DNA from: Malacoraja senta
Lineage: Eukaryota
Reading direction: 5' to 3'
DNA: 64,000 bases
Assembly (NCBI GenBank): GCA_038087875.1
Contig: CM075978.1
Coordinates: forward strand, 186,248,001-186,312,000
The notes beneath the pieces were generated by a model. That model made no database searches, had not been told where the DNA came from, and saw nothing but the letters and a program-made list of their open reading frames with translations. A program made the position numbers and the translations under genes. Every line of letters starts with the position of its first letter. Position 1 is the stretch's first letter. Positions 14,459-61,913 of this stretch are shown here, in pieces.

Positions 14459-15960
14459 CAGGGCTGCCAACTCTCACGCATTGAGCGTGAGAATCACACA
14501 TTTCGACAAATCCTCACGCACTCACGCTGATCACAAATTTCTCACGCTCTGTTGTGAGAAATTCTGTGATCAACGAAAATTTCCAAATTCATCAACTGCA
14601 TGGGCCACGGGTAGTTGGAGAGCCGGGGCTGAGGGAGGGATGGAAGCAGAAGCAGCGGTGGGCGAGTGTTTGCGGGCTGGCGAGTCGCTCGCTGCATCTC
14701 CTGCCATGGAGCAGCCTCAGTTCAAGAGTCCCGGGCCGTCGGAAGCGTTGCGCCGCTGCCCTGAGAGTCTCTGTGCCGAATTCGCTCTGGTGACCGGCAT
14801 GGACCAGGCTGCGGCTCGGTGCATCCTGGAGGACCGGGCAGTGAATGAGTGTCACCCAGCGCAGCAAGTAAGGCCATGTCCTGCTCCCGGCGGCAGTCAG
14901 AATTTGAGGATTTGCGGGAAGCGACTGACATGAGTGAGGCCGGCGAACGGCAGGAGAGAGGTACATGGGCTACGGAACCGGGGGGACTGCAGCCCCCCGC
15001 CCCACTTTTTTGGCTGGACATGTTCCAATATCTCCGGCTTTGGACGAGGCGCCGCTGTGTTCTGAGCAACCTGGTCGTGGGTGTTGGAGGGAGGGATGGA
15101 AGCAGAGGCGGGGGCAGATGCTGATGGGGAGCCGGGGCTGGCGAGTGTTTGCAGGGCTGGCGAGTGTTTGCCGGGCTGGCGAGTCGCTCGCTGTAGCTCC
15201 GGCCATGGTGCAGCCTCAGTGCAAGAGTACCGGGCCGTCGGAGGCGTCAGAAGCGTTGCGCCGCTACCTGTGGACTTGAACGTAATATGTTAAGTCCAGG
15301 GGGTCAGATGTGGGGCTTTATGTGTGGGCCAGATATATTGTCAGTGCAGAGGGGCTGGGAGCAAGGCCAAGTGTGCATCCAGAGTCATGGTCTCGAATAG
15401 TACTAGGTGTGCAGTCAAAGCTGGGACAATGGGAGTGTTCAGCACTGGGAACCTAAGCAGGTAAGCAGCTATGATCAGGGTAGAATAGGGGGCCAGGTGC
15501 AAGGCTGGACTCGGGGTCAGGAATGAGAGAAGGTATGCAACTGGAGTCAAGGTCATGAGTAGTACCAGGTGTGCAGTGAGCCCCAGGTTGGTCAACATGG
15601 GCCAAGTGCTTGATTATAATCTGATTTCCATACATGAATACACTAAGATCATTCATGTGCTGCACCTGTTGATCAGAGCCTGGCTCTACTGTGGAATGTA
15701 ATTAGGAATGTAATTTAGCCTAACCTTATTCATAGCTAATCCAATTTGAAGCATAAATATTGCATTCAAGTGTAAGTTAAAAGACTCGCTACAGTATGCA
15801 CCAGATTGCACAATTTCAAGCTGAAAAATGCAAAAGCTCCGTACCAATGGGAGTGGTGCACCCCCCTCCCACACCCTCCCCCTCCAGGTTTCTACGCTCC
15901 CTCGGGCTTGGTCTCTCGTAATTTCTCACTCCCAACTCTCACCCAATGTTGGCAGCCCTG
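14459..15960. mobile_element. Non-autonomous hAT-like DNA transposon, 1502 bp, 7-bp TSD
   Basis: Perfect 13-bp TIRs CAGGGCTGCCAAC / GTTGGCAGCCCTG; TSD CTTGTAT at 14452-14458 and 15961-15967; removal restores CR1 RLGLYSLEF. Confidence 0.92.
14640..14840 (+). pseudogene. Captured TDP2-like N-terminal UBA-like fragment inside the transposon
   Basis: RRCPESLCAEFALVTGMDQAAARCILED aligns by eye to human TDP2 RRLLCVEFASVASCDAAVAQCFLAEND (recalled). Confidence 0.6.
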
Positions 15961-17071
15961 CTTGTATTCACTGGAGTTTAGAAGGATGAGGGGGGATCTT
16001 ATAGAAACATATAAAATTATAAACGGACTGGACAAGCTAGATGCAGGAAAAATGTTCCCAATATTGGGCGAGTCCAGAACCAGGGGCCACAGTCTTAGAA
16101 TAAAGGGGAGGCCATTTAAGACTGAGGTGAGAAAAAACTTTTTCACCCAGAGCGTTGTGAATTTGTGGAATTCCCTGCCACAGAGGGCAGTGGAGGCCAA
16201 ATCACTGGATGGATTTAAGAGAGAGTTAGATAGAGCTCTAGGGAATAGATGAATCAAGGGATATGGGGAGAAGGCAGGCACGGGTTATTGATTGGGGACG
16301 ATCAGCCATGATCACAATGAATGGCGGTGCTGGCTCGAAGGGCGAAATGGCCTCCTCCTGCACCTACTTTCTATGTATCTATGTTTATTATTCATACATT
16401 TTCCCTGCCCAATACAGATTACCTAAAGAAGACGTAAAATGCTGGAGTAACTCAGCGGGTCAGGCAGCACCTCTGGAGAAATTGATATGTGACCTTTCAA
16501 GGCAGGACTCTTCTTTAGACTCCATTTTGAGTCGGGACCCTTCTTCAGACTAGTTTTGGGTTGGGACCCTTCTTCAGGCTGGTCGTAGAGCAGGGGAAGA
16601 GCAGGAATCACAGAGGGGGAGCAGAGAGAGGAGGTCTCAGAACTCCTGTCAGGGGTGAGAATTTCTTCAAAGTAGGCCTACCTTGAGGACATTTTGCAGT
16701 GGAGCAGTAAAATATAAATACAAGAACATCAGATTCTGGTTCCATTTAAAAAAAAATGTATATACAGATTACCTCACCGTCTCAATTTAAAAAAAAACTT
16801 GCATCCTTCCTCTATACGTCCTTCATCTGTCTCTTTATTCTATACTAAATAAATCTTCTAAATCCAGCTGTCTCTGCAACTCTGTTCTTTGCCAGTTCAT
16901 TGTTGGCAGAGACTTCTGTGCTTACGTCATGCTGTTTGATATTCCCTCTTTCCATCTTTTGTACTTTTTAAAACTCTCCAATCATTTCAGCTTGTTGCAA
17001 CAATTTTTGCTTGTAACAGTATTTTATAGAGCATCTTTTATAAAGGTTCTCTCTAAATGTATGTATGTTTT

Positions 17072-17357
17072 AGGCATAAGGGGTAGGCCATTTAGGACTG
17101 AGATGAGGAAAAACTTTTTACCCAGAAAGTTGTGAATCTGGAATTTTCTGCCACAGAAGGCAGTGGAGGCCAATTCACTGGATGTTTTCAAGAGAGAGTT
17201 AGATTTAGCTCTTAGGGCTAACGGAATCAAGGGATATGTGGAAAAAGCAGGAACGGGGTACTGATTTTCGATGATCAGCCATGATCATATTGAATGGTAG
17301 TGCTGGCTCGAATAGCCGAATGACCTACTCCTGCACCTATTTTTCTATGTTTCTATG
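17072..17357 (+). mobile_element. CR1 3' end fragment
   Basis: IRGRPFRTEMRKNF; GATCAGCCATGATCATATTGAATGG; TTCTATG tail. Confidence 0.85.
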
Positions 17358-18704
17358 AATCCTGCCCTGTTTGGTATATTGTCTATAAATAGCTAATAAA
17401 TGTAGAGTCTGTTCAATATTGATTCAGAAATGTTGCACTGTCTCAGTACTCTGTGAGGTATGGCAAAAGGAACTTGCATTGGTTTAGCACATTTAATGTA
17501 TGAGAACATCTAAAAATATTTTACAAAGGTGGAATTGTTAAAAATTGATACCTAGCCAAAGGAGATGTTAGGAAAGGATGGGACCAAAACTTAGTTAAAT
17601 ATTTAGCTTTTAAGAAGGTTTACAAAAATGCAAAGATGATGGTTCAAAATTTATACTTTGTATAAATTGAGGGAACTCGTACCATGGCTGATACCAGTGG
17701 GATAAGGGAACAGGGTAAGAGGCCAATTATATTCACTTTAAATTCTGGAATGGATCATCTGTTTCTACAGCAGGAATTCTGCCAACCTGGGGCAAACTGA
17801 CACCTGGAATCTATTTTGTAAAGATAGCGTAAGAGCAGGGCCGAATTTATTCTGTTGGGGGCAGGGGTCTGCTCATAGCCAGTTTCAATTGTGAAATGCA
17901 GTGTTTGTGTGGCATGACACGAGTCAATAAAAAAGCCTTATAAAAAATAACTATTTGGGTACGGGTAAAATGTGGCATAAATTAAATATTTATGTTATGA
18001 AATATAACTAGATAAAAACGCATCTGGTAATTAACTAATCGGGGAAAAATAAGTTTGTAAGGAAGATTTTTATTGAATTCACTCTTCATTTTTGAGATCC
18101 TTCACTTACTGAAAGAAGTACAGTAGAGTTCCCATTATTTGCACTGGAATTATCTACCAGAGGTTTTGTGGGACAAGAGCTGTAGAAACTGCAAAGGATC
18201 TTTTGTATCCAATGTTTTAAAGATTATGTATTAAAAAAACATCTGTGCAGACTTTCTGGCAGCCTGCTCTATTTAAAAGTCTTATCTACCCACTGATAAG
18301 GGAAAAAGTCCCCATTATTCTGTCATGTTGTAAGATTGTAGGTTCTGCAATGTTATGGTAGTTGTATTGTCTGTTTGCATAAGTAGTTTAATTGTAGAAA
18401 TTTATTATGAAAATATAAGAATGAGCCGTGAATATTAAAATGGGGTTTAGAATAGCCTGTTTCTCCTCTTTAAATATTCATTGCTGTCTACCTTCACTTC
18501 ACCTGGAGATTACGAGATGTAAAATGTGAGAGGTTTACTGTTTAACTTTGTTTCTTTGTGGGATTTGTGCGCTATGTATGCAAGATCAAAATCTAGGGAC
18601 GTAAGCTTTCTGAATTTTCATTATGTATGTAGGTGAATGCTCTCTATTTAAAGCTACGAATATATTGTAAATATACCCTTTATTCTCTTGCTATACACTG
18701 TGGA

Positions 18705-18870
18705 CAATAGACAGTAGGTGCAGGAGTAGGCCATTCAGCCCTTCAAGTCAGCACCGCCATTCAATGTGATCATGGCTGATCATCCCCAATCAGTACCCCG
18801 TTCCTGCCTTCTCCCCATATCCCATAACTCCGCTATTTTTAAGAGCCCTATCTAGCTCTCTCTTGAAAGC
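18705..18870 (-). mobile_element. CR1 3' UTR fragment
   Basis: GGTGCAGGAGTAGGCCATTC...GATCATGGCTGATC...CTCTTGAA. Confidence 0.8.
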
Positions 18871-18969
18871 GGATTGATTGTAATCGTGTATTGTCTTTTC
18901 ATTGACTGGATAGCATGCAACAAAAAGTTTTTCACTGTACCTTAGTATACAATACAATAATACGAAACA

Positions 18970-20520
18970 TTAGTTATCCTCCAGTCTTCCAGTACCTCAC
19001 CCTTGGCTGAGAAGATACAAAAATCCCTGCCAAGGCCCCAGTAATTTCAGCAATGTTCTAGGAATGCATATGTCAGACCCCAGAGATTTATCCTTTATGT
19101 ACCTCGAGACTGTCCGCATCCCTTTTGTTATATCAATATGTTTAGGACATCATTGTGCACTGAATTCTTCAGCTTCCTTGACTTCCATAGTAATGGAAAT
19201 GAGAGGTATTCATTTAAGAATAAGTCCATCTCCTGGTAGCTCCAAACATGGACGACCATTCTGATCGTTAAGGGGACCTATTCTCTCCCTGATTGCTCTT
19301 GGCATAGTTGTAGAATCTCTTTGGATTCTCCATGACCTTATTTGCATTCCTGATTTCCTTCCAAAGTGTACTGCATCTCTTACACTCAATGGTTTTGCTT
19401 GTAGCCAGCAGAATAACCTGTCATACATCTCCTTTTTCCTAACTGGAGTCTTAATATTCCTTGTTAGCATGGTTCCCTACTACTGCCAGCCTTGCTCTTC
19501 ACTTTCACAGGAACATGTTGATCCTGAATTTTCTCTCATTTACTAAAACCTCCTACTTTCCAGAAGTCATTTTACCTACTAGGAGTCTCCCAGTCAGCTT
19601 TGGCAAGTTCCTGTCCAATGCAATCAAAATTAGCCTTGCCCCTATTTACAACTTATACTTGTGTATAAGTCCTAGCTTTTTCTTAAAATGAATACAATTA
19701 TAGTCACAGATCCCAAGGAGCTCCTCCACTGATTGTCCAGCCTCATTTCCTAAGGCAGATCAAGTGCAGTACCCTTTCTACTAGGATCAACTACATATTG
19801 TTTGAGAAAACTTTCCTGGACATAGTTTCCTGGACATAATTATGCCCAGACATAGCACTATGTCTGTTCCAGTCAATATTAGGGAAGTTAATATCATCTC
19901 CTATTATATCTCTATTGTTCCTAAAGCTATCTGTGAGCTCCCTACACATTGCTCCTTTAATTCGGATGGACTAGTGAAGAGCCTATGGTACGATATAATC
20001 ACAGAGTTTACCCCATTCTTATTTCACCCACGTAGCCTCACTGGTTATGAGTATCCTCTCTTAAGTACTGCCATGATGTTCTCCCTAATCAAAAATGTCT
20101 CTGACCTGCTTGTAGCATTTGTACTCTGGAACATTGAACTGCCACTCCTGTTCATCGCTCAACCACGTTTCTGTAATGACTATGATATCATAATCCCATA
20201 AGTTTAGCCATGCCCCGAGCTCATCTGTCTTGTCTGTCAGTTTTGCTTTTCAGACCTTCCTTGCTTTCTGTCATGCCCCTGCCTGTCCTGTCTTCTGGAC
20301 TTGCTCATTTTATTTTCTATAGTTACATTAACTTTTTTATCAGCCGTCCTACTACTTTGTGCAGCTCGAGCAAATCTCCCCTCTGGGATCTTGGTCCTTC
20401 TCTAGTTCAGGTGGAACCCATCTCTCTTGCACAGGTACCCTCTGCCCCAGAAGAGTTCTCAATGGTCCAAGAACCTGAATCCATTTCCCTTGCTCCAGCT
20501 CCTCAGCTACTTATCATCTC
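18970..20520 (-). mobile_element. Old, degenerate CR1-like LINE body
   Basis: Sequence resembles reverse-complement CR1 ORF2/ORF1 (CCTCCAGTC..GTACCTCACC; GCTCCAAACATGGACGACCATT); no intact ORF. Confidence 0.45.
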
Positions 20521-22374
20521 CTATTATATTAGACAAAATATCATAAAACTGTAAAAATACGTTTTCTTTGGGAATGTGAGACTATAACAAGCCTAATAAT
20601 AATCTGTTCCATGTGCATTATTAACGATGGTATTTTGCCCAGCTAATCATTCTTGTACATACGAATTCTGAACAATGAATGGTAATAAACTTTAATGTAT
20701 CCATAGCTTCCTTTATTCGTCTGGCACGTGTAATATGTTTACTTTCAAAATTCTCAACTTTTCAGTTTTCCCTACTGTTGGCAGAGAGAGCAAGACATTC
20801 TTCATTGTAAATGTTATAGCTTGTTCTTTAAAGTGTATACATGGATGATATGGCTTCTCTGTAAACTCTTTTGGTGTCGCATCATCATTTCCTAAATACA
20901 AGGTTTTTCACAGTTCACGATGCTGCAGAATCAGCTGTTTTTCATCTCCGTGCACTGAGTTCCCTGCATTTTTCTGGGTCGTATCATAGCCTTTCATAAT
21001 GGGTTTGTAAATGTGCTAAGTTTGTTGAATGTCAGCACTAGATTGACTTGGTATTTGTTTGTTGACCAATATCTGGATTGTTTTTTAAATTTGAAAAGTA
21101 TTAAAAGTATTCTAATCCATTTAAACTTTCCTCGAGCGGTTAAGATGGCAAATGGTATGCTGTTTCATAGCTAGAAGATTTGAGTACAGGAGCAAGAATG
21201 TCTTACTTCAGTTAGGCTGGACATTGGTTAGACTGCTTTTTCAGTACTGTGCCAATATGGTCTCCTTAACTTAAAAAAATATATATACTTGCCATAGAGG
21301 TAATGCAGTGCAGGTTCACCAGACTGATTCCAGGATGGCTGGACTGCCATGTCAGGAGAGATTATCAACTAAGTTTATAGTCTTGAGAATTTAGAACAAT
21401 GAAAGGTGATTTCACTGATGTTTACACAATTCACTTGAACAATACATTAAGATCACCAACTGATGGTTTTTGATATGCTTCTTTGAAGAGTAAATTGAGT
21501 AACATAGTATTAGATTTGGATGTTTGAAGTAGAGGAATCACTCAACAAATGTATTTATATGGTAGGTGTTAATTGTATAAGATAACACGGACATTTTGCC
21601 ATTAATCTTCACCAATATTATTCAGTGTTTGGCTGAGTTGTGCTTGGCCACTTTGTACTCTATTCTGGACATTCCGTATTTCCACATTATGCTGTGCAGC
21701 CACTTCCCACAGCATAAAATCTGACTCATTTAAAATTCATCGCTTTTGATTTCAGAATGCTCCTGAAGTTTCAGCGATGACACAGTTAGTTGCATTCTGG
21801 CTTTCAGTTCGGATTGCAGATTCAAATCCCAATCAAGTCTAGTGCACAAACACCCTGGCTTGTTAAACAAATGCATTGAACATTTTAGCAGGTATTGGAA
21901 TCAGTGAAACTATTTTTTTTTTTAAAGCTGTGAATAGTTTACAAAATGCAATACTTAAAAATGTAATTATAATTTAAAACCTTCAACAGTTTATTTCAGA
22001 ACTAAAATTGCAAATTTTCCAATACATATCCTTGTCCTTTTGTCTATTCTTCTCCATTGAAATGAATGGGTTTATTGCAAGTACACTGGGTCTATTATAA
22101 CACTAATTTAGCGAGTAGATTGTTGGGGGATTGCAGCAAGTTTACAAGGTTCCACCAGACTACATCATGAGTCCAGTAATTAAGCTGGAAACCTCAGTGT
22201 AGATTGCCAGGAAGTTTAGAACGCCTGTGTTTGTGTGTGAGCCTTGAACTTTTTGACATTTGCAGGTGTAATTGCCGGACATCTAGTAGGACACGGCCAA
22301 TATTTCCTGGCACACTTTCATCCATCTGAAAAATGGGACTGAAATGTAACTCGCTTGAACTGAAACTTAACCTA

Positions 22375-22970
22375 TAGAAACATAGAAAAATAAGTGCATG
22401 AGTAGGCTATTCAGTCCTTCGAGCCAGCATCGCCATTCAATATGATCATGGCTAATCATCTGAATGTGGACCTGTGGAAAAGAACAAGCCAGGAGCCCAT
22501 TGACAAATTAGAAGGAGTAAATGGAGTTGGATTGAACACCCTCAGGAAACCTGCCACAAACATCATCCAGCAAGCCCTGAAATGGAACCTGCAAAGAAAA
22601 AGGAAATGAGGTCGCCCCAGGAACAGCTGGAGAAGAGGTGTCCAGACAGAAAAGTCTGAGAGTGGGCTCAACTGGGGAGATCTCGAAAGAACTGCCAACA
22701 ACTGATTGAGGTGGAGGACATTTGTCAATGGCCAATGCTCCCTGGAGGAGCAAAGGGCTGAAGAAGAAGAAGTAGGCCATTCAGCCCTTCGAGCCTGCAT
22801 CGCCATTCAATATGATCATGGCTGATCATCTGAAATCGGTGCCCTGTACCTGCTTTTTCCCCCCCATATTCCTTTTAGCCCTAAGAGCTAAATCTAACTC
22901 TCTCTGGAAAACATCCAATGCATTGGCCACCACTGCCTTCTGTGGCAGAGAAATGCACATTCACAACTAC
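22375..22970 (-). mobile_element. CR1 3' fragment hosting an RTE insertion
   Basis: CATAGAAA tail, GATCATGGCT, TAAGAGCTAAATCTAACTC. Confidence 0.8.
22465..22770 (+). mobile_element. 5'-truncated RTE-clade LINE 3' end with (GAA)n tail
   Basis: Decayed DLWKRTSQEPI..RRSKWSWI..TLRKPATNIIQQALKWN..GRPRNSWRR; 64-bp flanking duplication. Confidence 0.75.
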
Positions 22971-23190
22971 CTGAAATTTGACCATGAGTACTTGCTTTCT
23001 CCCTCCTTCCCCTCCCCTTCCCAGCTCTCCCACAAGCCTACTGTCTCCGCCTCTTCCTCTTCTTTATCCCGCGCCTAGCCCCCCCCCGACATCAGTCTGA
23101 AGAAGGGTCTCGACCCAAAATGTCACCTATTCCTTCTCTCCATAGATGCTGCCTCACCCGCTGAGTTTCTCCAGCATTTTTGTCTACCTT
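22970..23190 (+). mobile_element. Penelope-like 3' end / pLTR
   Basis: CT-rich tract, then CAGTCTGAAGAAGGGTCTCGACCC..GATGCTGCCTCACCCGCTGAG. Confidence 0.8.
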
Positions 23191-30264: not shown

Positions 30265-30835
30265 ATAATCGTAATTCATCATAATTGTAATTTATTAGCC
30301 AAGTATGTTTTGCAACATACGAGGAATTTGGTTTGCCATACAGTCATACCAAAAAAGCAACAAAATGCACAACTACATAAATTGACATAAACATCCACCA
30401 CAGTGGCACCTCCCCATTCCACACTGTGATGGAAGGCAATAAAGTCTTATCTTCTTTCCTCCTTTCGCCCGCGGTCGGGGGAATCGAACCATCCGCAATC
30501 GGGGCGATTGAAGCTCCTGCAGCCAGCGATCGAAGCTCCCGCGTTGGGGCGATCGAAGCCCCCTCATCGAGGCGATCGAAACTCCCGTGATCGGGGCTGT
30601 TGAAGCTTCCGGAAGTTGGAGCTCCCGAAGTCTGTCGCTAACCAGGGACTGCACGCTCCCCATTGTTAAAAGTCCGCAGGCTCCCGTGGTTGAAGCTCCG
30701 AGGTCGATCCCTGGCAAAGGGATTGCAAGCTCCACGATGTTAAGTCCGCAGGCTCCCGTGGTTGTAGCTCCCAAGGTCTCAGCAAGAGGCCACCAGCTCC
30801 ACGATGTTAGGCCACAGTGCAGACGGAGATACAAC
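30265..30835 (-). mobile_element. Non-autonomous retroelement with GC-rich internal repeats (relative of 51275-52059)
   Basis: Shares CAGTCATA, CACTGTGATGGAAGG and GCTCC.CGATGTTAGGCC..GCAGACG with the 51.3-kb copy; GATCGAAGCTCC repeats. Confidence 0.6.
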
Positions 30836-31299
30836 ATGGATCTATTGTATATAAGTCAAAGGATACCTCCGACGGGGGGTGAATGCCAGTCCCAGAGTGG
30901 GACAGAAGATTTGGCTAAGATCTCGAAAGAGGTTTTGGCCAGAAGTTCCAGCCGAGGAACTGAAGACAATAAATCTAGGCCAGAGATGGCCTTGAGGTTT
31001 ATCGACAGCGACACAACCTATCTGAAGAATCTGAAGACATTATCACAGAAATTGTGAGTAGATATCGATTATTACTTCTTTGAATTTTGAAGCTGAAAAG
31101 CTTTAATTTTAAACGGCTTATGTAAGAAGAGCCAGAAAGCCAGCCAAGGAAGTGTTTTGCCATTAAATTAATCATTATTAATTTAATAGATGTTAGGTAT
31201 GTTGTCGGGATATTCAGATTGTTATGGTTCCTGAGAAAGATGTTTACACAAAGTTAAAGGCACAGAATTGAGAAGACTTTGTTCGTTCAATTTAAAGAC

Positions 31300-37199: not shown

Positions 37200-37399
37200 N
37201 NNNNNNNNNNNNNNNNNNNNNNNNNNNNNNNNNNNNNNNNNNNNNNNNNNNNNNNNNNNNNNNNNNNNNNNNNNNNNNNNNNNNNNNNNNNNNNNNNNNN
37301 NNNNNNNNNNNNNNNNNNNNNNNNNNNNNNNNNNNNNNNNNNNNNNNNNNNNNNNNNNNNNNNNNNNNNNNNNNNNNNNNNNNNNNNNNNNNNNNNNNN
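37200..37399. other. Assembly gap (200 N)
   Basis: Run of N; flanks are unrelated sequences. Confidence 1.
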
Positions 37400-44082: not shown

Positions 44083-45764
44083 CATTAGCATGTTGGCAAG
44101 TTGCAACCAACTAACAAGTTGCTTAGCTTGGCTTTAAAATGGGCTTTCTGGTCATTCTGAGCTTTGCATTGTTGCAGTTCTTGTTAATCTGATGAAAATT
44201 ACTTTACGGCTAGGACTCTTAAATTAAGCATTGATATGATTCAAACTGAACTGGAATTTGCAATAGAGACGATTCTATAACGTCTAAATCAGCAGCACTT
44301 TGTGGAGTCTGCAAGTGCACATTTGAATACATACATCCTATGGTATCTGTTGTTGATACCCTGCTGCTGTACATGTGTACAAGAGAATCACTGATTTGAA
44401 ATAGCCTTAGCCCTCTTATTATCCATGTCATTAAACTATCAGAATTGTTTTACCTTGTGTGGCGTGATGTAACAGAATTTGTCATCATACGTTGTTGAAT
44501 CGCTGAACAACCTCAATGGCATATTTCTACTAGATTGTAAAGTCTGAAGCATCATTTCTTCTCTATCATGATTTAAAAATTCTGTATATTTATCTAAAAA
44601 AAATTAAATTAAATGTAATATTTTAGCTCGACCTTAATCCCAAATATGCAACCTAATATGTTTTTCTTCTGGAAAATGTTTCAAAATTAAAATAAAATAA
44701 CGTATATCAGTGATAATTCTTTATCAGCCTACTTTAAAAAAATCTTTTTCACCTGGATGTCATGTAGTTAGGGTCTGGTTTAAGCTTTGATCAAAAAAGT
44801 GACAGACATCACAAATACTGTTTAACATTATCGACAGAAGGCTTTGAGGCTGGAGCAGGTGCTATCTCATTACCAGTGACCAGATTATCCAGGCCTATGC
44901 GTTTGACTTACGATAAAACCCCTATTAATGATAATTTTCATAACAGCAATGTTGGAAATGATCCATTTTGGTTTGAATACCCAGTAGTATCGGCTGACAA
45001 ACACAGCTCAGCAATAATAATCCTGTGATGAATAATGTGATGACAGTCCTGTGATGTCCAATAAGTAACCGTGTTCTGTTTCTTTCAAAAACTTCAACTG
45101 AGCCTACAGTCACTTTGTTACAAAGTGAACATATGGGAAATAATTTATGGACTTTTTTTTCTTATGTGCTTTTACCTCGATTCTTTTGATCCTTGGATAC
45201 TTCACAAACATCACCGCTAATTTTCCTGACTTGAATATTGTTTTTATTCCCACTAACTTCATTTATTCCTAGTATTAATAAGAGTTACACAATTATTTCT
45301 CAATTACACAACAATTTTAACATTGTTTATTGACTTGGACTAATATCATTGTTGCTTTTGTCTGAACTGTTTTGATTTCCACTGAAGTTTTTTAAATAAG
45401 CTTTTGGAAGAAACCATAAATGTGGATTTCACAACATTTTACTGATTTGTGCTGCATTTCTCTTTAATTTAGAATTGCTGCTATTGATACAATATTTTAT
45501 TTTCTCTTGAATTTAAGTCTCCCGTTTGCTGTACGTTGTTTAAATTAGCATTTTTTTCAGTGCAGTCATAATTGCTATTTTCAGTTCTGACACACAGTTT
45601 CCTTAATTGTTTGCATTCCTCTCTACTTTGGTAAGTGTCTATCTTTAAATTGTTCTTGCCTAGAAATTCCTTCACTACTTTTCAAAGGTGTTAAAATGGC
45701 ATTGCATATAATGCTAATGCTTTTAAAGGTCTCAAAGATTTGCAGAGGTTCTCTGAACAACTTT

Positions 45765-45792
45765 CTGAAGAAGGGTCTCGACCCGAAACGTC
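45765..45792 (+). ncRNA. Minimal hammerhead ribozyme core in a pLTR fragment (45760-45897)
   Basis: CTGAAGA-A-GGGTC-TC-GACCC-GAAAC-GTC: CUGANGA box, stem II, GAAA box, NUH triplet. Confidence 0.7.
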
Positions 45793-46063
45793 ACCCATTC
45801 CTTCTCTCCAGCGATGCTGCCTGTCCCCGCTGAGTTACTCCAGCTTTTTGTGTCTATCTTCGGTTTAAACCAGCATCTGCAGTTCCTTTCATACACACTA
45901 AACAGCTTTATTGGATTTCACACTGTAAAGTTGCCCTATGTCAATTTCAGCACATTGATCTGTTGTAGGATCTCACAGCTGTAGGGACTTAGCCTCACAG
46001 TTGCTGTCTCAGGAGCCAGCCTTTAAAGGGATATATATGTACAAGAAAGAGTACTTATCTAGC

Positions 46064-51274: not shown

Positions 51275-52059
51275 AAAGTATAAAGTGTAAAGTATCCTTT
51301 ATTGTCATTCAAACTGTCTCCAGTTTGATCGAAATTGCATACCTTGCAGTCATAACAACAACAAAAAAATAACAGAACACACAATGAACACGGTAACATC
51401 CATCACAGTGAGTGTACCAGGTACCTCCTCACTGTGATGGAAGGTAAAAGTCTTTGTCTCTCCTTCCTTGTTCTCCCTCTGCGTTGAGGCGATGTTGGGC
51501 CCCCCGCCGGGTGATGGTAAGTTCCGCGGTCGAATCCGAGCTCCGCGAACGGGCCGGTTCAAACTCCGCGGCCCGGGGCAGACTAAGCTGCCACCTTCCA
51601 GTCCAGCGGACGAAGCTGTTGTTGCGGGAGTTCCGGAGAATCGGACACCAACCTGGGACCTGCGAGCTCCCGACGTTGTCGTCCACTGGGCCCACGGCCG
51701 AAGCCTCCGAGGCCCCGAAGTCGGGCCGTCGCCGCAGGGCCACCACAGCCCCGAAGTCGGCCAGCTTCGCGATGGTGAGTCCTGGCTCTGCCTCTGGAGA
51801 CTCGAGGTCGGTCCCAGTTGGAGGCCGCCAGCTCCGCGATTAGGCCTCAGCGCAGACGCAGACGGGGATACGACAGAGAAAAGGTCGCATCCCCCCCAAG
51901 GAAGAGCATAAAAACAAGTTTCTCCCACCCCCCACACATACACAACTAAAAATAAACTAAACATACATCTAACAAGACAAAAGAAAACAAAAAAAAAAGG
52001 AAAAAACAGAAGGACTGCAGGCGAGCCGCAGCTGCTTGGGCAGCGCCGCAACTTCCGGA
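51275..52059 (-). mobile_element. Non-autonomous retroelement with (TACTT)-like tail inserted in the Helitron 3' terminus
   Basis: Minus 5' CCGGAAGTTGCGGCGCTG; GC-rich body; tail AAAGTATAAAGTGTAAAGTA on plus; related to 30265-30835. Confidence 0.6.
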
Positions 52060-52825: not shown

Positions 52826-52894
52826 TTATTCTATTTTTATATTGTTGAAACCATTCAACATATGTTTAGCCACATTTCCTTTAACCTTTTTATA
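52689..52894. repeat. Inverted repeat, 81-bp arms, 44-bp spacer
   Basis: 52689-52769 vs 52814-52894, 5 mismatches by manual comparison. Confidence 0.92.
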
Positions 52895-53847
52895 AAATTT
52901 AAGTGTCCACCAGTGCTGTATTTCCTACTTTTATGATTACAGTTTTGACAAATGATCTAAGAATGGAAGGTGATTACAAAAATATGTTCCGATTTGTTCC
53001 TTTGGAATGAGGAGGGGAATGCAAACTAAGGTTTAAGTGATAGTTGACTCAAATTGGAATGTTTTTAAGTTGAATAAGTTTAAGCAGTGACGTGAGAGAA
53101 TGGTACTCCTGTACGGTGTAGTTGTTGCTTAAGGGGAGAGCACTTGAAGGTAAATTAGGATAAAGTGAGCAATATTACACCGTAGATTTTTATCTTGCCT
53201 TGGTACTGTATTCATCTCAGTTGAACAAATAATCGTAAAAGTCTATTGATTTCAAAGACTAATAAGAAATTTATTTTGCATAACTTCATGATTGATTTAC
53301 TAGCCTAGACGAATTAAAATAAAGGGTGCATATTTGAAAAAAATTGCACAATGGTCACTAGTTTCTGGCTTGTGATTATTGTACGGGTGATTATTCAGTG
53401 TAACTACTTCTTTCCTGAAGAAGCAAATTCTGTATGGTACTGTTGTCAACTAAAGAATCTGAAGTTAACCATTATTTTGGGTAAAATTGGCTTTCTCTGC
53501 AATGACTGGAATTTTAAAAATCCGTTTTATATCAAGGGTGAAGGATTCAAAGGAAACTGATTTTAAAATCTTCATCTTTTTATAATTTTATACACCTTGT
53601 TCTTTAATGACTTTTAAAAATAGATTCTACTCCCTTTATATTAGTCGGAAAATAAATGTCAATAGTGAAGAGAAGATTGTCATGGAAGCCTCTTGTTTCA
53701 ACCGCTAGAATTTGCAATGCCATATAAAGTCTTTAAATTTTGTTTTAATTTGTTCATACAATGTGAACGTCACTGTCAATGTCAGCATTCATTATTCATC
53801 CCTATTTGCCCTTGAACTTTAATTAGGCAAAGACCTCTAAATCTAAG

Positions 53848-54040
53848 GTTGACACAAAATGCTGGATTAACTCAGCGGATCAGGCAGCATCTCTGAAGAA
53901 AAGGAATAGGTGACGTTTTGCGTCGAGACCCTTCTCGTCACCTATTCCTTTTCTCCAGAGATGCTGCCTACCCCGCTGAGTTACTCCAGCATTTTGTCTA
54001 TCTTCAGTGTAAACCAGCAGCTGCAGTTCCTTCCTGCACA
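53848..54040. mobile_element. Inverted Penelope pLTR pair
   Basis: AAAATGCTGGA..GAAAAGGAATAGGTGACG / CGTCACCTATTCCTTTTC..CCAGCATTTT. Confidence 0.8.
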
Positions 54041-56725
54041 GAAGCTAAGGTCGGTCTCCTTGGATCAGGGTCTGCAGTTATGAGGACAGCACATTGGGTA
54101 GAGTTGGCCAATTTCCTTTTCTGAAGGACATAGGTGTACCAGATAGAATTTTTGCAACAATCTAGTTTTATTTTTCTTAATTACCCGTATCAAGATTTTT
54201 AAAAAAAATGTAAATCTGCCATTGTGGATTTGATCTCTTACCTCTAGCTGTTATTCTAGTAATTCAAACACAATGCTGCCATACCCATCTATTTACATTG
54301 TAAGTATGTCACCATGAAAAGGATTATTCCTTTCAGGTTTTCAGCATGCAGTGAATTTTTTTTTTTTTAAACTGCAGATACTGGAGATCTGAAATGAAAA
54401 CAGAAAATGATGGAAACATTCATCAGGTCAGGCAGTTCTGATGAGAGGTCCGACTTGAAACATTAACTCTCTTTCTCTTTCCACAGATTCTTCCTGATCT
54501 GCTGAGTGTTTCCAGTATTTTCTGTGGGGGGATGATTTGGGGCTTCCAGCATAAACCCGCTAAACCTTTGAAAGGCCCATTTATGAATTTAGGATAGAAT
54601 CGCACAAAGATTATATTGTCGAGGGAGGCTATTTCAGAGGTCATGGAGTTCATGTCGACTCTCGCAAAAGCAATTCAGCTAGTTCCGCAGCTTCCCTTAA
54701 CCCATCGCCCTGCAAACTATTTATTTTAATGTACTTATTCTGTTTTCTGTTGAATGCCACGTATGAATCACGCAGTACATCTCCTGACTGTGTCCAGATT
54801 TAAAACAACTTGCTACGTAGTTTTTCCTTTTTCTCACTTTTTTTGGTTGTTTTATTATTCACCTTCACACTAGACTTTTCTCCATTTTTCCATCAGATCC
54901 CTCATCAACCATCCCTGATCCAAAGGGAATGACCCCAGTTTCTTCAGTCATTCTGTGTAATTAAAGTTCTTTATCTCTGGAATCATTCAGGTAAATTCTC
55001 CCCTATCCCCTCAAGGCTTTCAAAGCTCTACTAAAGAATGATGCCCATAACTGGGCACACAGCTCCAGTTGTGGCTGAACTGGCATTTTGTAATGGTTCA
55101 TCAAGACAACCTAATGTTCATCAAGCCATCCTTGCTCTTGTATTTTATCCTCTCTTTATAAAGTAAAGTATCCAGTTTGCATTTTAAACTATTTTCTTTG
55201 TCCATCTCTGCCACTCATCAATTTGTGCACATTTGCCCTCGGATTTTTTTTCCCGGATCCAGTTTTAGAAGCATGTCTTCTGTTTGTATTCACATTTATT
55301 CTTCTTCTTACTGAAATCTAGAATTTAACTTTTTTTTCCATTAAACATCACCTGACACGTGTTCACCCATTTCATCAGCCTTTTTTTATTCTCTTAAAGT
55401 TTATTACTATTCTTTCACAGTTCACTGCATCAACATGTTTTGGTGCTGAAAGAAAAGTTGTTGTTTGGCTTGATATTTGTTTAATGGGATTTTATTATGA
55501 AATACATGGAAACATATACGAGTTGTGCATTACTTAGCAGTTCTTTGGCAGGAGTGGGAAGTGAACTGCGTAATGATGTTAGGCATCATTAGGCGGTTTA
55601 TAAATAAAGGAACTGGGTGCAGTGGTGGTTGTTGTATTGACAACAGAAGCATAATTCATCATCCAGAAAATAATTCTCCAGTTTGGCAAGATGAATCTAC
55701 ATTGTGAATGAATCTTTGGATTTGTCATGCTGGCATTGTAATATGGGATTGAACAGTAGGCTTCTGTGTATCTGTTCCTATCTCTGTTTCGCTTTTTTTT
55801 TAAAGCTAAAACCGTGCTTCTGTTTAATTGAATGTTCACAAAGATGTAATGGTACATGAAGGTAAATTGTTGACGGGTGACAAATAAAGCAAGAAACAGC
55901 GTGCATCTGCAGTAGTATCAGTGACTGCATGCAAGGTTATGTGATAATTAGAAAGAAGTGTTTTTTTGGTTTGAAAATGCAGCTAGACCGAGTTTCATTT
56001 CAGCATAAAATCGTACTAAATTGTAAGGATAACATGCACATGTTGCAGACTTTTAAAATATTCATGTAGAAAAATCCCATGTAAAGAAAAGAGAATACTA
56101 AGTTACATGAAATATTTAACTGACAACTTCCAGTAGGGATATCTGGATTATGATCTGAGGATTCATGTGCCACTTCAAATAATGTAAGCAGAATAGAAAT
56201 TAAACTTTGGACATTTTTCACAAATATTATTGTACATTTATAGATTCATTTTCTGGTGGATGCATGTATTAATAGACATTTTCAATGCTGTATTGATAGT
56301 AATCTGCTATTTCTAAAGATAGAGTAGTCTTTAGTTTGCCAAATTTATGACAATTTTTCTACATTAGTGTGATTTTTGCTATAAATCATGAACCTTTGTT
56401 TTAATTGCATTTATTTGTTGAACAAATGGCACTTTACATGCAAATCAAAATTTGCCAAACATCTTCATATTGGGTTTTCTTGAATTTAATTTTCCTTGGA
56501 ATGCACAGTATTTTTCACTGCCTTGGCTATTAGCATCTTATTCTTAATCTAGCTTCAGCTGGTTTTCATTTTCTCAGCTCAATGATTGCAGTTATGTTCA
56601 TGGGTCAGAAGATGAGGCAAGTTCCTCTGCAGGGACTTGAATAATAAATTAAGACTGGAACTCCTAAAAAAGACACAAAATGCTGCAGTAAGTCAGTGGA
56701 TCAAGCAGCATCTCTGGAGAACGTG

Positions 56726-57390
56726 CAGGGCTTGAAATGAATGGTTGCCCGGGTGCCAATGACCACCCAAAGTGCCGCCGGGCAACCTAAACGCTGAGTC
56801 ATTTTGCCCGGCTTGGCACTGCAGATACTGGTTTATACCGAAGATAGACACAAAAAATTGGAGTAACTCAGCGGGTCAGGCAGCATCTCTGGAGAAAAGG
56901 AACGTGACGTTTCGTGCTGGCGATGGCCGTATTGCAAAGATATTAGGTGCGTGGTGACGAAGGGTCGGAGCGAATGACGGGCCCCGCATAGCGGCAGCAG
57001 CGTCTGTGACAGCGGCTCCATCTCCTCCTCCTCCCGCACCCCGCCCGCCCTGATAGCGTCCGCTGCCGGCCGCTCTCTGCCAACGGCGCTTTCAAAACAA
57101 ACCATCTCGCACGCCGGGAGGGAGGGGGAGGCTTCCTTCCGCCGTCTGAAGCAGCTGCACCAAAGATCCTATAGCTATAGGATCCTTGAGCTGCACCACT
57201 CGGCCCCGCACCTTCCTGTTGGTTGGCGGAGATGGGGAAATGGTGGCGATGAGATCCCAACCGCCTCCCCCTTTGGCGGCGGCACTTGGCGGTGGACAGG
57301 GACGGCTAAGGCAGCGGGGCGATGTTGTCCGAGGAGCGCTGACCTTCCTTCCCCCCCACCTCCCCTCTATCTCTCTCTCTCCCTCTCCCT

Positions 57391-57422
<32 letters not shown>

Positions 57423-58760
57423 TGTACGCCCCCCTCCACCTTCCTCCCCTATCCTGAGACCTCTCCTCTCCATCCCGTACTGATTCCCATTCAAGATGAA
57501 TGGGGGGAACATTCTGAAGAAGGGTCTCGACCCGAAACGTTGTCTTTTTCCTTCGCTCCATAGATGCTGCCTCACCCGCTGAGTTTCTCCAGCATTTTTG
57601 TCCACCCCCATTCATCCTGTACTGATCCCCCCCCCATTCATCCTGTACTGATCCCTCCCATCCATCCCGTACTGATCCCGCCATTCAACAACACTGACAT
57701 CCCCCGTGCTCTCCCCTCACAATTTTACATACTCCAACCAACACATACTAATTACAGAATTCATTTTAACGGTAAATCAATGCTCTTAATATGGAGTATC
57801 AGTACTGTAGTTATTTAATGAGCAACATTCACAACTATACGTTGGATTTATCCAGGTTTTATTTATACAGTCGGTCATATACATCACAAATTTGGTCAGG
57901 AGATATGTCCTTTGAAATGTTAATGTTAATTCTGAAGTGGGAATGATAGAAACAGCGTTTATCAATAATTTATTTTAAATCTGATGCGTACAAACTGGGT
58001 ATCTTCATTGCTGTTCACAACACGTACATCTAATCTGAATGTCCGGTAATGTGGCGTTTTGACACCTTTAAACATATTACCAAAAGAACATTTGCTGCAG
58101 TGATGTCCTTTGGCCATCTCTTGTCAGTTAATGTAATGTTTAACTTGTCAGATGGGTATAGTCGGTTTTAACAGCTATTATCATAAAATACCTTTAGAAA
58201 TGTCCTTGCAACCTGTATATTTTGTTATGGATAAATGATGTGGGAAGCGAGAGTGTTTCTGTACCAATAGCAATAACGACCCATGCTATGGCCATGTCAT
58301 GGTAATTTTCGGTCCTTCACAGAAAACATACTTGCATCAATCTGTAGTGTGCATGCATATATGTTACCATGGTCCAGGATTTATTGACACAGGTTGATCA
58401 TACGCTGAATAAACCAACCACATTTTTGTTTGGAAGTGGAAAGAACTAATAGAAATTGCATTAATTGCAATGTGTAAAAAGAGTTGAGATACTGTATTAT
58501 AATTTTGCTGCATGTCATTGTGGTATATATCATGTCTTGATTGGTGAATATGTTGTGACTTTATTGGAAGCAGAAATAATATGTGAATGCTTCATTGAGC
58601 ATAATTCCAACTGGTCCGAGCACATTATCGCACGCGTCATGCAAACCATCTAAAATGACCACCTAAACTGCCATTTGGCAACCTAAAAAGCTGCCAAGGT
58701 TGCCCGGCTGGCAACAGGGAAAAAAGGAGAGGAAACAGGAGAGGAAACAGGAGAGCCCTG
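56726..58760. mobile_element. Non-autonomous hAT-like transposon, 2035 bp, 5-bp TSD
   Basis: Termini CAGGGCT / AGCCCTG; TSD ACGTG at 56721-56725 and 58761-58765; subterminal GGCAAC/GTTGCC repeats at both ends; removal restores pLTR CTGGAGAACGTGGATAGGTGA. Confidence 0.82.
57514..57541 (+). ncRNA. Minimal hammerhead ribozyme core
   Basis: CTGAAGAAGGGTCTCGACCCGAAACGTT. Confidence 0.65.
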
Positions 58761-59791
58761 ACGTGGATAGGTGATGTTTTGGATCGGTACCCTTCTTCTG
58801 ACTGATAGTGTGATGGGTGGGGAGAGAAAGCTGGAAGAGAGGAGTGACAGGACAAAGCCTCGCAAATAATAGTTTGATATAGGTGAGAAGGGGTTGATAG
58901 GCATGTGGTTGGACAAAGGCTACAGATGAAAAGATAGACGTGGGACTAAAAGATTGAAGTCTGGAATTGTGAAGCTAGAGGAAGGCATGTAGGTGGAAGG
59001 GGAAGGGAGAAAGGTGCGAGTCCAGATGTGGCTTAGGGAAAGTGGGGGGGGGGGGGGAGAAAGGGTGAGGAGGAAGAGGGGACAGCGGGTGAGGTTTATT
59101 CTAACCTAAAATTGCAGAATTCAATGTTTATAGCATTGGATTGTAAGTTACCCAAGCGGATTATGAGGTGCTGTTCCTGCAGCTTGCATGTGACCTAAGT
59201 ATGGGAATGGAAAGAGGAGTTAAAATGGTTCGCATTTGGGAGATACAGTAGGCCTTGGCGGATCGAGCGCAAGTGTGCGGTGAAACGGTCAACAAATCTA
59301 TGCTTGGTCTTGCTGATATACAGGAGGCCACAACGGGAACTCCAGATGCAGTAGAGGAGGTGCATGTGAACCTCTGTCTCACGTGGAAGGACTATTGTGA
59401 TCCTTGGATGGAGGTAAGGGAGGAAGTGTAGGGATAGGTGTTACATCTGCAATTTCAAGGGAAAGTATCTGGGGATGGGGTGGGTTTGATGGGAAAGGAT
59501 GAATGAACCAAGGTGTTGCAGAGGGAGCGATCTCTGCTGAAGGCGAAGAGGGGTGGAGATGGGAAGATGTGACCTGTGGTGATGGAAATGTTGCTGAATG
59601 GTGTGTTGAATCCAGACGCTGGTGGGGTGAAAGGTGAGACCAGGGGAACTCTATCCTTGTTCTGTCTGGGGGCAAGAATAGTGAGAGCATAACTATAGCA
59701 CACAGAGGAGACACCGGTGAGGAATCCATCTTTGACAGCAGGGGGAACCACAGTTACTCAAGAAAGAGGACCTCATCCGGGGAGCATCATG

Positions 59792-59826
<35 letters not shown>

Positions 59827-60127
59827 CATTCCTCTCCTGCACAACCTGAACCGCTTCCTCTTGCTTCACAATTCGCAACTCTTCAGTCTTTTTGTCTATC
59901 ACTTTCTGCCTTTTCATCTCTGGTCATTGTCCAACCATCTATCAAAACCCCCTTTCATCTGTATCCACTTGCCAGGCTTTGTTCTGCCGATCCTCTTCCA
60001 GCATTCTTCCCGCCCACAATCATTCCGAACAAAGTCATCCATCCATGTTCTCCAGTGATGCTGCCCGGTTACTCCAGCACTTTGTGTCCTTTTTTGTCAA
60101 CCAGCATCTGCAGTTCCTTGTTTCTAC
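58761..60127. mobile_element. Degenerate inverted Penelope-like element (continues from 56665-56725)
   Basis: Minus RQRFTCTSS, KDRVPLV..FSRDRSLCNTLVHS; poly-C junction 59793-59824; plus-strand pLTR to 60127. Confidence 0.75.
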
Positions 60128-60883
60128 AAGAGTGAAACTCAGTTCCGTTTCAGTCTTGAGGGAGAACTAGACTGGGGAAAAGGACAGAAATTGTTATGTT
60201 GGGAGTTGGCATAGACCCAGTGAACCAGATGGCCCCTTCTTGGTTGTTATAAGATGTAAGCTTAAGTTAAGATTGTTGTTGAGTCTTAGATGGCTCCTGC
60301 AGAGCAGCATGGTAGATATATGTTCACGATAAAGACTGTTTTGGTTCAAGGAGGAAGTTCAGCCCCACTTTTTTTAGGGAATTTGCAAAGAGCATTATCT
60401 GGTACATTTCCACATCATTCCATAAATTATTTTATTTAGTAATCGGAGAACAGGGAAAAGTGGTTCCAGGGGGAAATCTTTTTTCCTGGGAGTTGGTTGA
60501 TGTAACATTTATTGCTCAGCCTGGATGGTCCTCAGATAATATTGATAGGAGGCTCTCTTGAATCAACAACAGCAGTCCTATGGTGATGGCATTCAATCAG
60601 GATTGCATTGATGTTGACCCAGCACAAACATGAGTGTGGAACTCTTTGTACAAATTGTTCTGGTCATGACTTGGACATGAATTGGAGGTGAGAGTGACAT
60701 AATTTTGCTGCATGTCTGTGATTTTTACCAGTTAAATGCGGTTGAACTATTTCACTGCCTGTGGTGCGTGTCCTGCATTATGTGAAGGAAGGGTCTATAT
60801 TGAATCACGTGTTGCTGCATTCATCAAGTGGCTCACTTGTGCTGTTTTCTTGATTGTTGCAGCTGTACTCAACAAAGCAAATT

Positions 60884-60911
60884 CTGAAGAAGGGTCGCGA
60901 CCCGAAACGTC
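60884..60911 (+). ncRNA. Minimal hammerhead ribozyme core in pLTR fragment
   Basis: CTGAAGAAGGGTCGCGACCCGAAACGTC. Confidence 0.68.
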
Positions 60912-61226
60912 ACTCATTCCTTCTCTCCAGAGATACTGCCTGTCCCGCTGAGTTACTCCAGCATTTTGTGTCTAAATTCTTTTGGAACCTTGGTTGTAGA
61001 TGGTTAGTACATTTTGACTGATTCTTTAGGAGGCCAGGAAAATGTATTCTGACCTAATCTTTGATTTGACTTTTTGTAGACGGATGGTGTGTCTATTCCA
61101 GTGACTCCTACCCTGCCCGCCCTCCCATCAGCCCACCCGAACGATTTGAAATACAGATGGGAACTTAAGACCAATTGATATTTGACTCAAAAATCACTTT
61201 AGAAGCAACTGAATTGAACAGACCAG

Positions 61227-61913
61227 CAGGGACGGAAAACACGGGGGAGGGGGGGGGGGCAGAGGGGACATCCCCCCCTCCCATGTTTTGAGAGGTGGGG
61301 GACATCCCCCCCCCCCCCAGTTTTTGTCATCCGGATTTTAAAATCTCCGCTTTCCGCGAGACAGTGGGGGTGGGACTGCTGATCGAGGGCGCCGATTGGA
61401 CGAGAGAGACGTCGGTAAGCAGGCAATGGGGGCGGGACTGAGGATAGAGTGCGGTGATTGGAGGAGGAAGACGTGGCACAGACCTGCGCCTCATCCACAG
61501 CCAGGATCGATCCCTGCCGGGTCTCCGACGCTGTCCCGTCCCCACCCGAGTCCCCCCCCCCCCCATGGGTGGCCAGAGAGGTCGGGAGTCAGACGGGAGC
61601 GGTACCCCCAGGCCCACAGCCAGCGCAGAGAAGCAGCGCTAAACCCAGCTCAACTCTGCCTGTCCGGCCAGGTTAACGTGCCTGGGCTTGCGGGAAATAT
61701 GGCCAGCGCGGAGAAGCGCCGCTGGTATCCCGTCAGTCCAGTCAGGGCTTGTAGGTTAACCCGGCGAGACAGGCAGAGTTGAGCTGCATTTAGTGCTGGA
61801 TTGAGCCTCCGAAGCCTCGCGCATGTGTGTGTGAGTGTGCGCATGCACGCACGGCCGCCAAAAAATTGTGTCCCCCGGTCCCCTCCATATTTTGATACCG
61901 AGATCCGTGCCTG
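61227..61913. mobile_element. Non-autonomous hAT transposon, 687 bp, 8-bp TSD
   Basis: TIRs CAGGGACGGA / TCCGTGCCTG; TSD CAGACCAG at 61219-61226 and 61914-61921. Confidence 0.88.

What the first reader, a model, noticed from the sequence alone, without database searches (positions are those of the whole stretch)
14459..61913. Three CAGGG-ended hAT-like elements all carry GC-rich host-like cargo: candidate vertebrate Pack-hAT system
Seen: elements 14459-15960, 56726-58760 and 61227-61913 have no transposase. Each holds a CpG-rich block within AT-rich DNA: a TDP2-like exon, an ATG-containing 5'-exon-like block, and a CCAAT/GC-box promoter-like block. Inference: systematic capture of gene 5' ends or CpG islands, as in Pack-MULEs, by several hAT lineages, which could seed promoters or antisense RNAs.
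Basis: inference. Interest (0 to 1): 0.75.

Follow-up and report, generated by a model that had tools for sequence, protein, structure and literature searches.

The report
One gene-carrying transposon, two unproven
Three small cut-and-paste transposons lacking their own enzyme sit in a long intron of a skate-like RANBP9 gene; one carries a copied start of the DNA-repair gene TDP2, but nothing shows that the GC-rich insides of the other two came from genes.

Summary
All three elements are real insertions at the stated coordinates, and none encodes a transposase.

- **E1 (14459-15960):** 13-base inverted ends and an 8-base target duplication. Removing it restores three paralogous host repeats without a gap. 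About 250 bases inside its left end lies a first exon whose two best PDB matches are both TDP2. Two other public contigs show the same end and the same exon at different sites, so the cargo belongs to the family. This copy is truncated after codon 44 and partly duplicated.
- **E2 (56726-58760):** a precise insertion with a 5-base duplication, which fits the hAT5 type rather than the usual 8. Its GC block is bracketed by inverted Penelope-like fragments and has no protein match. It is 10-110 times single-copy depth, against 1,400-3,300 for the backbone. Its origin is unknown.
- **E3 (61227-61913):** a perfect 8-base duplication. Its whole interior is about 1,300-20,000 times single-copy depth in three species. 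Its promoter motifs are no more frequent than chance.

One of three cargoes is shown to be host-derived, so this window does not establish a system. This scan has already reported the TDP2-carrying family several times elsewhere in this genome. The assembly gap at 37200-37399 touches none of the elements.

The parts
14459..15960 (+). E1: non-autonomous hAT-type element of 1,502 bases. Inverted ends at 14459-14471 and 15948-15960; 8-base target duplication GCTTGTAT at 14451-14458 and 15960-15967.
   Evidence: Gapless paralogous empty sites.
14600..14834 (+). E1 cargo: CpG-rich leader plus a TDP2-like first coding exon (ATG at 14706). It is shared with other family copies only up to 14834, which is codon 44. 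This copy's own GTAAGG at about 14868 lies in unshared sequence.
15087..15268 (+). Second, partial direct copy of the same leader and exon start inside E1. It is 84.5% like 14661-14760 and keeps a 29-base stretch that copy 1 lost.
56726..58760 (.). E2: non-autonomous element of 2,035 bases. 7-base ends CAGGGCT/AGCCCTG, subterminal TTGCCCGG/CCGGGCAA motifs, and a 5-base target duplication ACGTG at 56721-56725 and 58761-58765 (hAT5 type).
56818..56917 (+). Internal fragment of the very abundant Penelope-like repeat, nested in E2.
   Evidence: loose ends and depth.
56918..57507 (.). E2 GC-rich block. No coding match. Contains a CT-rich microsatellite and a 28-base palindrome. Depth is 10-110 times single copy.
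57508..57606 (-). Second fragment of the same part of the Penelope-like repeat, inverted relative to the first (51 nt, 84% complementary).
57650..58760 (.). E2 AT-rich backbone and right end. Depth is about 800-47,000 times single copy at the sampled positions, in three species. A family variant lacks 57843-58354.
61227..61913 (.). E3: 687-base MITE-like hAT-type element. Ends CAGGGACGGA/CAGGCACGGA (9/10); perfect 8-base duplication CAGACCAG at 61219-61226 and 61914-61921.
   Evidence: Another copy with a different flank ends at 61914 (record 16).
61359..61474 (.). Two tandem units spaced 62 bases apart (78% alike) that hold the GC-box-like and ATTGG motifs. This is the most highly repeated part of E3.
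61634..61798 (.). Internal hairpin of E3 (44-nt arms, 86% complementary). It gives only sub-threshold Rfam miRNA-like hits.

Best explanation
These are three independent insertions of three different non-autonomous hAT-superfamily families, all in a long intron of a RANBP9-like gene. Each must be moved in trans by a transposase encoded elsewhere; that step is inferred.

Only E1 demonstrably carries host-gene DNA. An ancestor of its family picked up the leader, first coding exon (the start of the UBA-like domain) and intron start of a TDP2-like gene. The likely route is template switching during repair or replication at the element, as proposed for animal Pack-TIRs (inferred). The loaded element then transposed. 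The window's copy is a decayed, rearranged passenger.

E2's GC block is a sub-family-specific insert of undetermined origin. It could be filler DNA copied from a repeat-rich locus, or a nested Penelope-type derivative.

E3's GC-rich interior is simply the backbone of a very abundant MITE-like family.
For: E1:
- Ends, duplication and gapless empty sites.
- The same left end at three different flanks, with the same exon about 250 bases inside: window, L001 and L002, at 83% and 81.5% identity over 14459-14834.
- The less-decayed copies read on through ...EDN(K/Q)WLLE followed by GTAAGT or GTAGGT.
- The best PDB match is the human TDP2 UBA domain (E=7e-5). With a three-copy profile, the top two hits are human and C. 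elegans TDP2.
- Pfam UBA_4 is on record for P0003.
- CpG sites are lost by transition in 14-32% of cases per copy, against roughly 4-7% overall divergence per copy. That is what methylated, decaying DNA shows.

E2:
- Gapless empty sites with a 5-base duplication; hAT families with 5-base duplications are the hAT5 group (PMC12730594).
- Single-copy depth is 21/79/26 in runs X1/X2/X6.
- The GC block reads 1,158/1,326/619 at 56928 and 2,372/818/641 at 57073.
- The backbone reads 47,025/114,103/86,246 at 57862.

E3: depth is 38,669-424,537 in X1, and similar in X2 and X6, across the interior.

No Pfam or protein homolog was found for E2 or E3 ORFs. Promoter motifs are at chance level. Two copies of an unrelated repeat also score as CpG islands.
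Against: - The species' own TDP2 locus could not be fetched, so DNA-level parentage of E1's cargo is not shown. The protein match covers only about 30 residues.
- A copy number for the E1 family was not measured here. I saw three copies; the figure of more than 1,000 comes from earlier unchecked notes of this scan.
- High copy number does not exclude an old capture that was then amplified, so a host origin for the E2 or E3 interiors is not refuted, only unsupported.
- Depths are summed contig word depths, which the tool warns are not copy numbers.
- Bin means for the E2 GC block are far higher than the two point values, probably because of low-complexity stretches.
- No autonomous partner was found for any of the three.
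Confidence: 0.7

Rival explanations
1. One reading: several hAT lineages in this genome systematically capture gene 5' ends or CpG islands, and all three interiors here are such cargo that could seed promoters or antisense RNAs.
For: - E1 fits this reading.
- E2's GC block is 20-100 times rarer than its backbone, as a sub-family-specific cargo would be.
- All three blocks meet CpG-island composition.
- Earlier unchecked notes of this scan list other first-exon captures in this genome, from CYB561D2 and ING1, besides TDP2.
Against: - No parental gene or coding similarity was found for E2 or E3.
- E3's interior is at thousands of times single-copy depth throughout. Its 'promoter' units are the most repeated part, about 5-10 times more than the rest of the interior.
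- Motif counts are at chance level.
- Other TE families in the window are equally CpG-rich.
- CpG decay in the E1 family argues against maintained islands.
- There are no RNA data.
Confidence: 0.15
2. E2's GC block is the interior of a nested non-autonomous Penelope-type element with inverted terminal repeats. It would then be another TE, not host DNA.
For: - The block is bracketed by two ~100-base fragments of the same part of the Penelope-like repeat in inverted orientation.
- It is itself moderately repeated in three species.
Against: - No target duplication is visible at 56818 and 57606.
- Both flanking pieces are internal fragments of the repeat, not its ends (loose ends).
- No copy of the unit outside E2 was seen.
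Confidence: 0.3
3. E1's exon is not from TDP2. It comes from another UBA_4-domain gene, or the resemblance is chance.
For: - The window copy alone scores only E=0.16 against PDB and E=0.055 against Pfam UBA_4.
- UBA_4 also occurs in p47, UBX, FAF1 and DCN1 proteins.
Against: - Less-decayed copies reach E=7e-5.
- The two best PDB hits are TDP2 from human and from nematode, ahead of p47.
- As in TDP2, the UBA-like domain is N-terminal, close behind the start codon.
Confidence: 0.1

Closest known systems
Animal Pack-TIRs, in particular Pack-hAT (Tan et al. 2021, PMC8277862; for example hAT-N8_XT carrying a 291-bp CAPSL 5'UTR piece in Xenopus tropicalis)
   Same: E1 is a non-autonomous hAT element whose interior is a host-gene 5' fragment. 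It occurs at several sites with different flanks.
   Different: That survey found 370 Pack-TIRs in 100 animals (208 of them hAT), only 4 multicopy, the example shown having 3 copies. No cartilaginous fish is mentioned in its text. The E1 family is said by earlier notes of this scan to have over 1,000 copies, which I did not measure. The parental locus required by their definition was not located here.
Rice Pack-MULEs
   Same: These are transposase-less TIR elements carrying GC-rich gene fragments, and they raise local GC content (PMC5861414).
   Different: They belong to a different superfamily (Mutator, 8-11 bp duplications) and occur in plants. A bias toward GC-rich sequence has been reported for Pack-MULEs (PMC5861414 citing earlier work), whereas no bias is shown here.
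hAT5 group of hAT transposons (Kapitonov and Jurka 2007, cited in PMC12730594)
   Same: E2 has hAT-like CAG... ends and an exact 5-base target duplication.
   Different: No transposase is available to place E2 in that clade. The assignment rests on duplication length alone.
Ordinary hAT-derived MITEs
   Same: E3, and the E2 backbone, are short, lack an ORF, have short inverted ends plus subterminal repeats, and occur in thousands of copies with internal hairpins and tandem units.
   Different: They are unusually GC- and CpG-rich compared with the AT-rich MITEs usually described.

Membership tests
hAT superfamily (non-autonomous member) | Short terminal inverted repeats that begin YARNG | tested here: met
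   E1 CAGGGCTGCCAAC 13/13; E2 CAGGGCT 7/7; E3 CAGGG/CAGGC, 9/10.
hAT superfamily (non-autonomous member) | 8-base target site duplication | tested here: met
   Met for E1 (GCTTGTAT, gapless empty sites) and E3 (CAGACCAG, 8/8). Not met for E2, which has exactly 5 bases and so fits only the hAT5 subgroup.
hAT superfamily (non-autonomous member) | Relationship to an autonomous element that encodes a hAT transposase (BED finger, DDE core, hAT dimerisation domain) | not testable with these tools
   None of the three has a transposase ORF. The genome beyond the window cannot be searched by DNA.
Pack-TIR / Pack-hAT | TIR-element ends enclosing sequence that is not TE sequence but host-gene sequence | tested here: met
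   Met for E1 only, at the protein level (TDP2 UBA). Inconclusive for E2 and E3: no host match was found and the interiors are repeated.
Pack-TIR / Pack-hAT | An identifiable parental copy of the captured sequence elsewhere in the genome | not testable with these tools
   The real TDP2 protein or locus of the species could not be retrieved: length filter, and only TE copies returned.
Pack-TIR / Pack-hAT | Transposition after capture (the same cargo at sites with different flanks or duplications) | tested here: met
   For E1, the same end plus cargo has three different left flanks in the window, L001 and L002.
TDP2 first exon | N-terminal UBA-like domain closest to TDP2, with a start codon and a downstream splice donor | tested here: met
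   Human TDP2 at E=7e-5 and C. elegans TDP2 second. ATG sits in GCCATGG context. GTAAGT or GTAGGT follows ...WLLE in L001 and L002. In E1 itself the exon is cut off after codon 44.
CpG island / promoter | Composition (GC at least 0.55, CpG observed/expected at least 0.65, 200 bases or more) | tested here: met
   Met by all three blocks, but also by two copies of another TE at 30381-30880 and 51371-51960.
CpG island / promoter | Promoter motifs above chance; unmethylated state; transcription start activity | tested here: not met
   Motif counts equal shuffled expectation. CpG decay in the E1 family looks like methylated DNA. Methylation and transcription themselves could not be tested, because run X15 is probably DNA.

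The most novel reading that the evidence does not exclude
Skate hAT families, of both the 8-base and the 5-base duplication type, recurrently pick up CpG-rich gene starts and amplify them to tens, hundreds or thousands of copies. E2's 10-110-copy GC block would be another such cargo whose parent gene has no coding part. This would be a vertebrate counterpart of rice Pack-MULEs, far above the copy numbers reported so far for animal Pack-TIRs.
Probability: 0.2. Interest if true: 0.7.

Novelty: new member of a known kind. Interest (0 to 1): 0.35.

Why it matters
Gene-fragment capture by cut-and-paste transposons is well studied in plants. In animals it is known mostly as single-copy events. A family that spreads a gene's promoter-proximal region and first exon could scatter alternative first exons and splice donors through introns; here one lies in the sense direction inside RANBP9. 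For this window, however, the main result is cautionary. GC- and CpG-richness inside a transposon is not evidence of host origin in this repeat-dense genome, and only one of the three claimed cargoes passes a test.

Tried and rejected
- **Real TDP2 for E1:** the exhaustive representative search with the 55-aa exon returned only another TE copy and one spurious bacterial repeat protein. The word-indexed search returned two TE copies, and its length filter bars full-length TDP2.
- **Homologs of E2 and E3 ORFs**: none.
- **Pfam on 18 ORFs**: the only family matches were sub-threshold (UBA_4 for the exon, plus three chance-level hits) and none was a transposase domain.
- **Rfam:** nothing at gathering thresholds in the whole window. 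In 56600-62000 there were only far sub-threshold miRNA-like hairpin hits in E3.
- **Other copies in the window**: none for any of the three elements.
- **Strict and relaxed TIR+TSD scans**: no further hAT-like elements, so there is no 'empty' control element in the window.
- **Joints at 56894-56902 to 57513**: ignored. Their sides are under 30 letters and the site is palindromic.
- **Nested hAT in E3's hairpin:** considered and rejected, because it has no duplication.
- **E1 as the genuine TDP2 gene start:** rejected. It has TIRs and a duplication inside a repeat, the exon is truncated, and the same arrangement occurs at other flanks.
- **Expression:** the run labelled RNA (X15) behaved as DNA, so nothing can be said.
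Full report
**Scope and the gap.** The finding brackets 47 kb, but it concerns three separate loci. The assembly gap at 37200-37399 lies about 21 kb after E1 and 19 kb before E2, and none of the elements spans it. Its two flanks share no repeat copy, so continuity across it can be neither shown nor excluded, and no reading frame depends on it. I did not try to fill it.

**Context.**
- The window is 42% GC with CpG observed/expected 0.45, and it is dense in repeats.
- In the 5.4 kb on which contigs were laid, only about 60220-60762 is at single-copy depth.
- At 5201-5794 there is a genuine CpG-island promoter and first coding exon of a RANBP9-like gene on the + strand (PDB RANBP9, E=1e-29). Two more exons lie near 6.5-6.7 kb.
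- The three elements therefore lie downstream, most likely in a long intron of that gene.

**E1 (14459-15960): the insertion.**
- The ends are a perfect 13-base inverted repeat flanked by the 8-base duplication GCTTGTAT. The last G can be assigned to either.
- Deleting the element and one duplication gives a sequence that aligns without gaps over 290 bases to three other copies of the host repeat in the window. This is a precise insertion.
- Both ends carry GTGAGA/TCTCAC-type subterminal motifs.
- There is no transposase: the longest ORF is 150 aa, and Pfam finds nothing of that kind.

**E1: the cargo.**
- From 14706 an ORF in a good start context encodes 44 residues shared with other copies.
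- The exhaustive protein search and the indexed search each found predicted proteins from other assemblies (P0001 at 84% identity, and P0003).
- Their contigs L001 and L002 begin the match exactly at the same inverted end, CAG(G/A)GCTGCCAAC. Their left flanks differ, and the same leader and exon lie about 250 bases inside, at 83% and 81.5% identity over 14459-14834. The exon is therefore cargo of the whole family, not an accident of this locus.
- In those copies the exon runs on through ...EDN(K/Q)WLLE to a GTAAGT or GTAGGT donor. In E1 the similarity stops at 14834, and a second partial copy of the leader and exon start follows at 15087-15268.

**E1: which gene.**
- The window copy alone gives only the human TDP2 UBA domain, at E=0.16.
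- The better-preserved P0003 gives TDP2 at E=7e-5, with p47 next at E=0.44.
- A profile of the three copies ranks human TDP2 first and C. elegans TDP2 second.
- Feature and fold look-alikes are UBA_4 domains.
- The species' own TDP2 could not be retrieved, so DNA-level parentage is inferred, not shown.
- CpG sites are lost by transition in 14-32% of cases per copy, against roughly 4-7% overall divergence per copy. These copies decay like methylated DNA.

**E2 (56726-58760).**
- Ends: the terminal inverted repeat is only 7 bases, but both ends are rich in TTGCCCGG/CCGGGCAA motifs in both orientations.
- Duplication: an 8-base duplication is absent. The host is a Penelope-like repeat, and removing E2 plus exactly 5 bases (ACGTG) restores gapless alignment to many paralogs. 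hAT families with 5-base duplications are known as hAT5 (PMC12730594). E2 is therefore a real insertion of a different lineage.
- Layout: a 92-base left arm; a 100-base internal fragment of the Penelope-like repeat; the 590-base GC block; the same repeat segment inverted; short tandem units; then about 1.1 kb of AT-rich DNA and the right arm.
- Depth: single-copy depth is 21, 79 and 26 in the three DNA runs (three species). The GC block is at 619-2,372 at the two positions reported. The AT-rich backbone is at 38,724-114,103 at 57862 and 57984, and at up to about 1 million further right.
- A family variant lacking 57843-58354 is present in all three species.
- The block is therefore 20-100 times rarer than the backbone, which makes it a sub-family-specific insert.
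- Coding: nothing in it encodes a recognisable protein. The ATG at about 57233 opens a 7-codon frame.
- Origin: whether it is filler DNA copied from a repeat-rich locus, or the interior of a nested Penelope-type derivative, cannot be decided here.

**E3 (61227-61913).**
- The ends match 9/10, and the 8-base duplication CAGACCAG is perfect.
- A contig of another species carries a diverged copy that ends at 61914 and continues into different DNA (record 16).
- A contig of run X1 crosses the left junction of this very copy without a mismatch (record 7).
- The interior has two tandem units spaced 62 bases apart, a 44-nt-arm hairpin and G/C homopolymer runs.
- Its depth is 38,669-424,537 in X1 and similar in the other two species, which is roughly 1,300-20,000 times single copy. 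The 'GC-box/CCAAT' units are the most repeated part.
- GC-box, CCAAT and CRE/E-box counts equal the expectation from shuffled sequence of the same composition.
- No ORF has a homolog.
- E3 looks like the backbone of an abundant MITE-like family.

**Control for the inference.** Blocks with CpG-island composition are common in this window. Besides the true RANBP9 promoter and the three elements, two diverged copies of another repeat (30381-30880 and 51371-51960) qualify. GC- or CpG-richness inside a TE is therefore weak evidence of host origin in this genome.

**Mechanism.**
- Shown: three precise insertions, no transposase, family-wide cargo in E1, and the repeated nature of the E2 and E3 interiors.
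- Inferred: mobilisation in trans by hAT transposases, and capture by template switching during gap repair or replication followed by transposition. That is the model proposed for multicopy animal Pack-TIRs (PMC8277862).
- Not tested: any promoter, antisense or splicing effect.

**Comparison and novelty.**
- Pack-TIRs, mostly Pack-hAT, are already described in animals: 370 in 100 genomes, 208 of them hAT, and only 4 multicopy (PMC8277862).
- E1 is a new member of that kind.
- This scan has already reported the TDP2-carrying family several times elsewhere in this genome, along with other first-exon captures. I used those notes as leads only. My own data confirm the arrangement of end and exon at three sites, but not the copy number.
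- No paper in the searched library links TDP2, transposons and skates.

**Verdict.** A 'system' biased toward 5' ends remains an open, genome-wide question that this window cannot answer.

Noticed in passing
window 5201-5794, and exons near 6460-6570 and 6650-6720 (+ strand): Genuine CpG-island promoter and first coding exons of a RANBP9-like gene (PDB RANBP9, E=1e-29). The three elements lie downstream, probably in a long intron. E1's exon and GT donor are in the sense orientation.
   Followed up: partly
window 30381-30880 and 51371-51960: Two diverged copies (73% column identity) of another repeat with CpG-rich tandem units (GATCGAAGCTCC-like). They meet CpG-island criteria and show that such blocks are often TE-borne in this genome.
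   Followed up: partly
window 56815-56917, 57508-57606 and about 20 other places (for example 45759-45886, 60881-60974): An extremely abundant Penelope-like repeat, at summed depth in the millions. It is the host of E2 and is also nested inside E2 as an inverted pair.
   Followed up: no
window 57843-58354: Some E2-family copies in all three species lack this 512-base stretch (joint 57842 to 58355; 10, 3 and 4 contigs). This is an internal-deletion subfamily.
   Followed up: no
window 61135 and 61967 (flanks of E3), run X2: Single contigs of another species with the identical depth value 78.9 cover both flanks of E3. This might be one contig that skips E3 (an orthologous empty site), but the joint was not among the rows shown.
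   Followed up: no
L001 (ENA assembly ERZ25070917, 4,646 bases): A contig filed in a metagenome assembly is clearly skate-like host DNA. It shares several repeat families with the window, including an uninterrupted copy of E1's host repeat at L001:1-287.
   Followed up: partly
run X15: A run guessed to be RNA behaves like DNA, as the tool itself remarks. No expression evidence could be drawn for any element.
   Followed up: no
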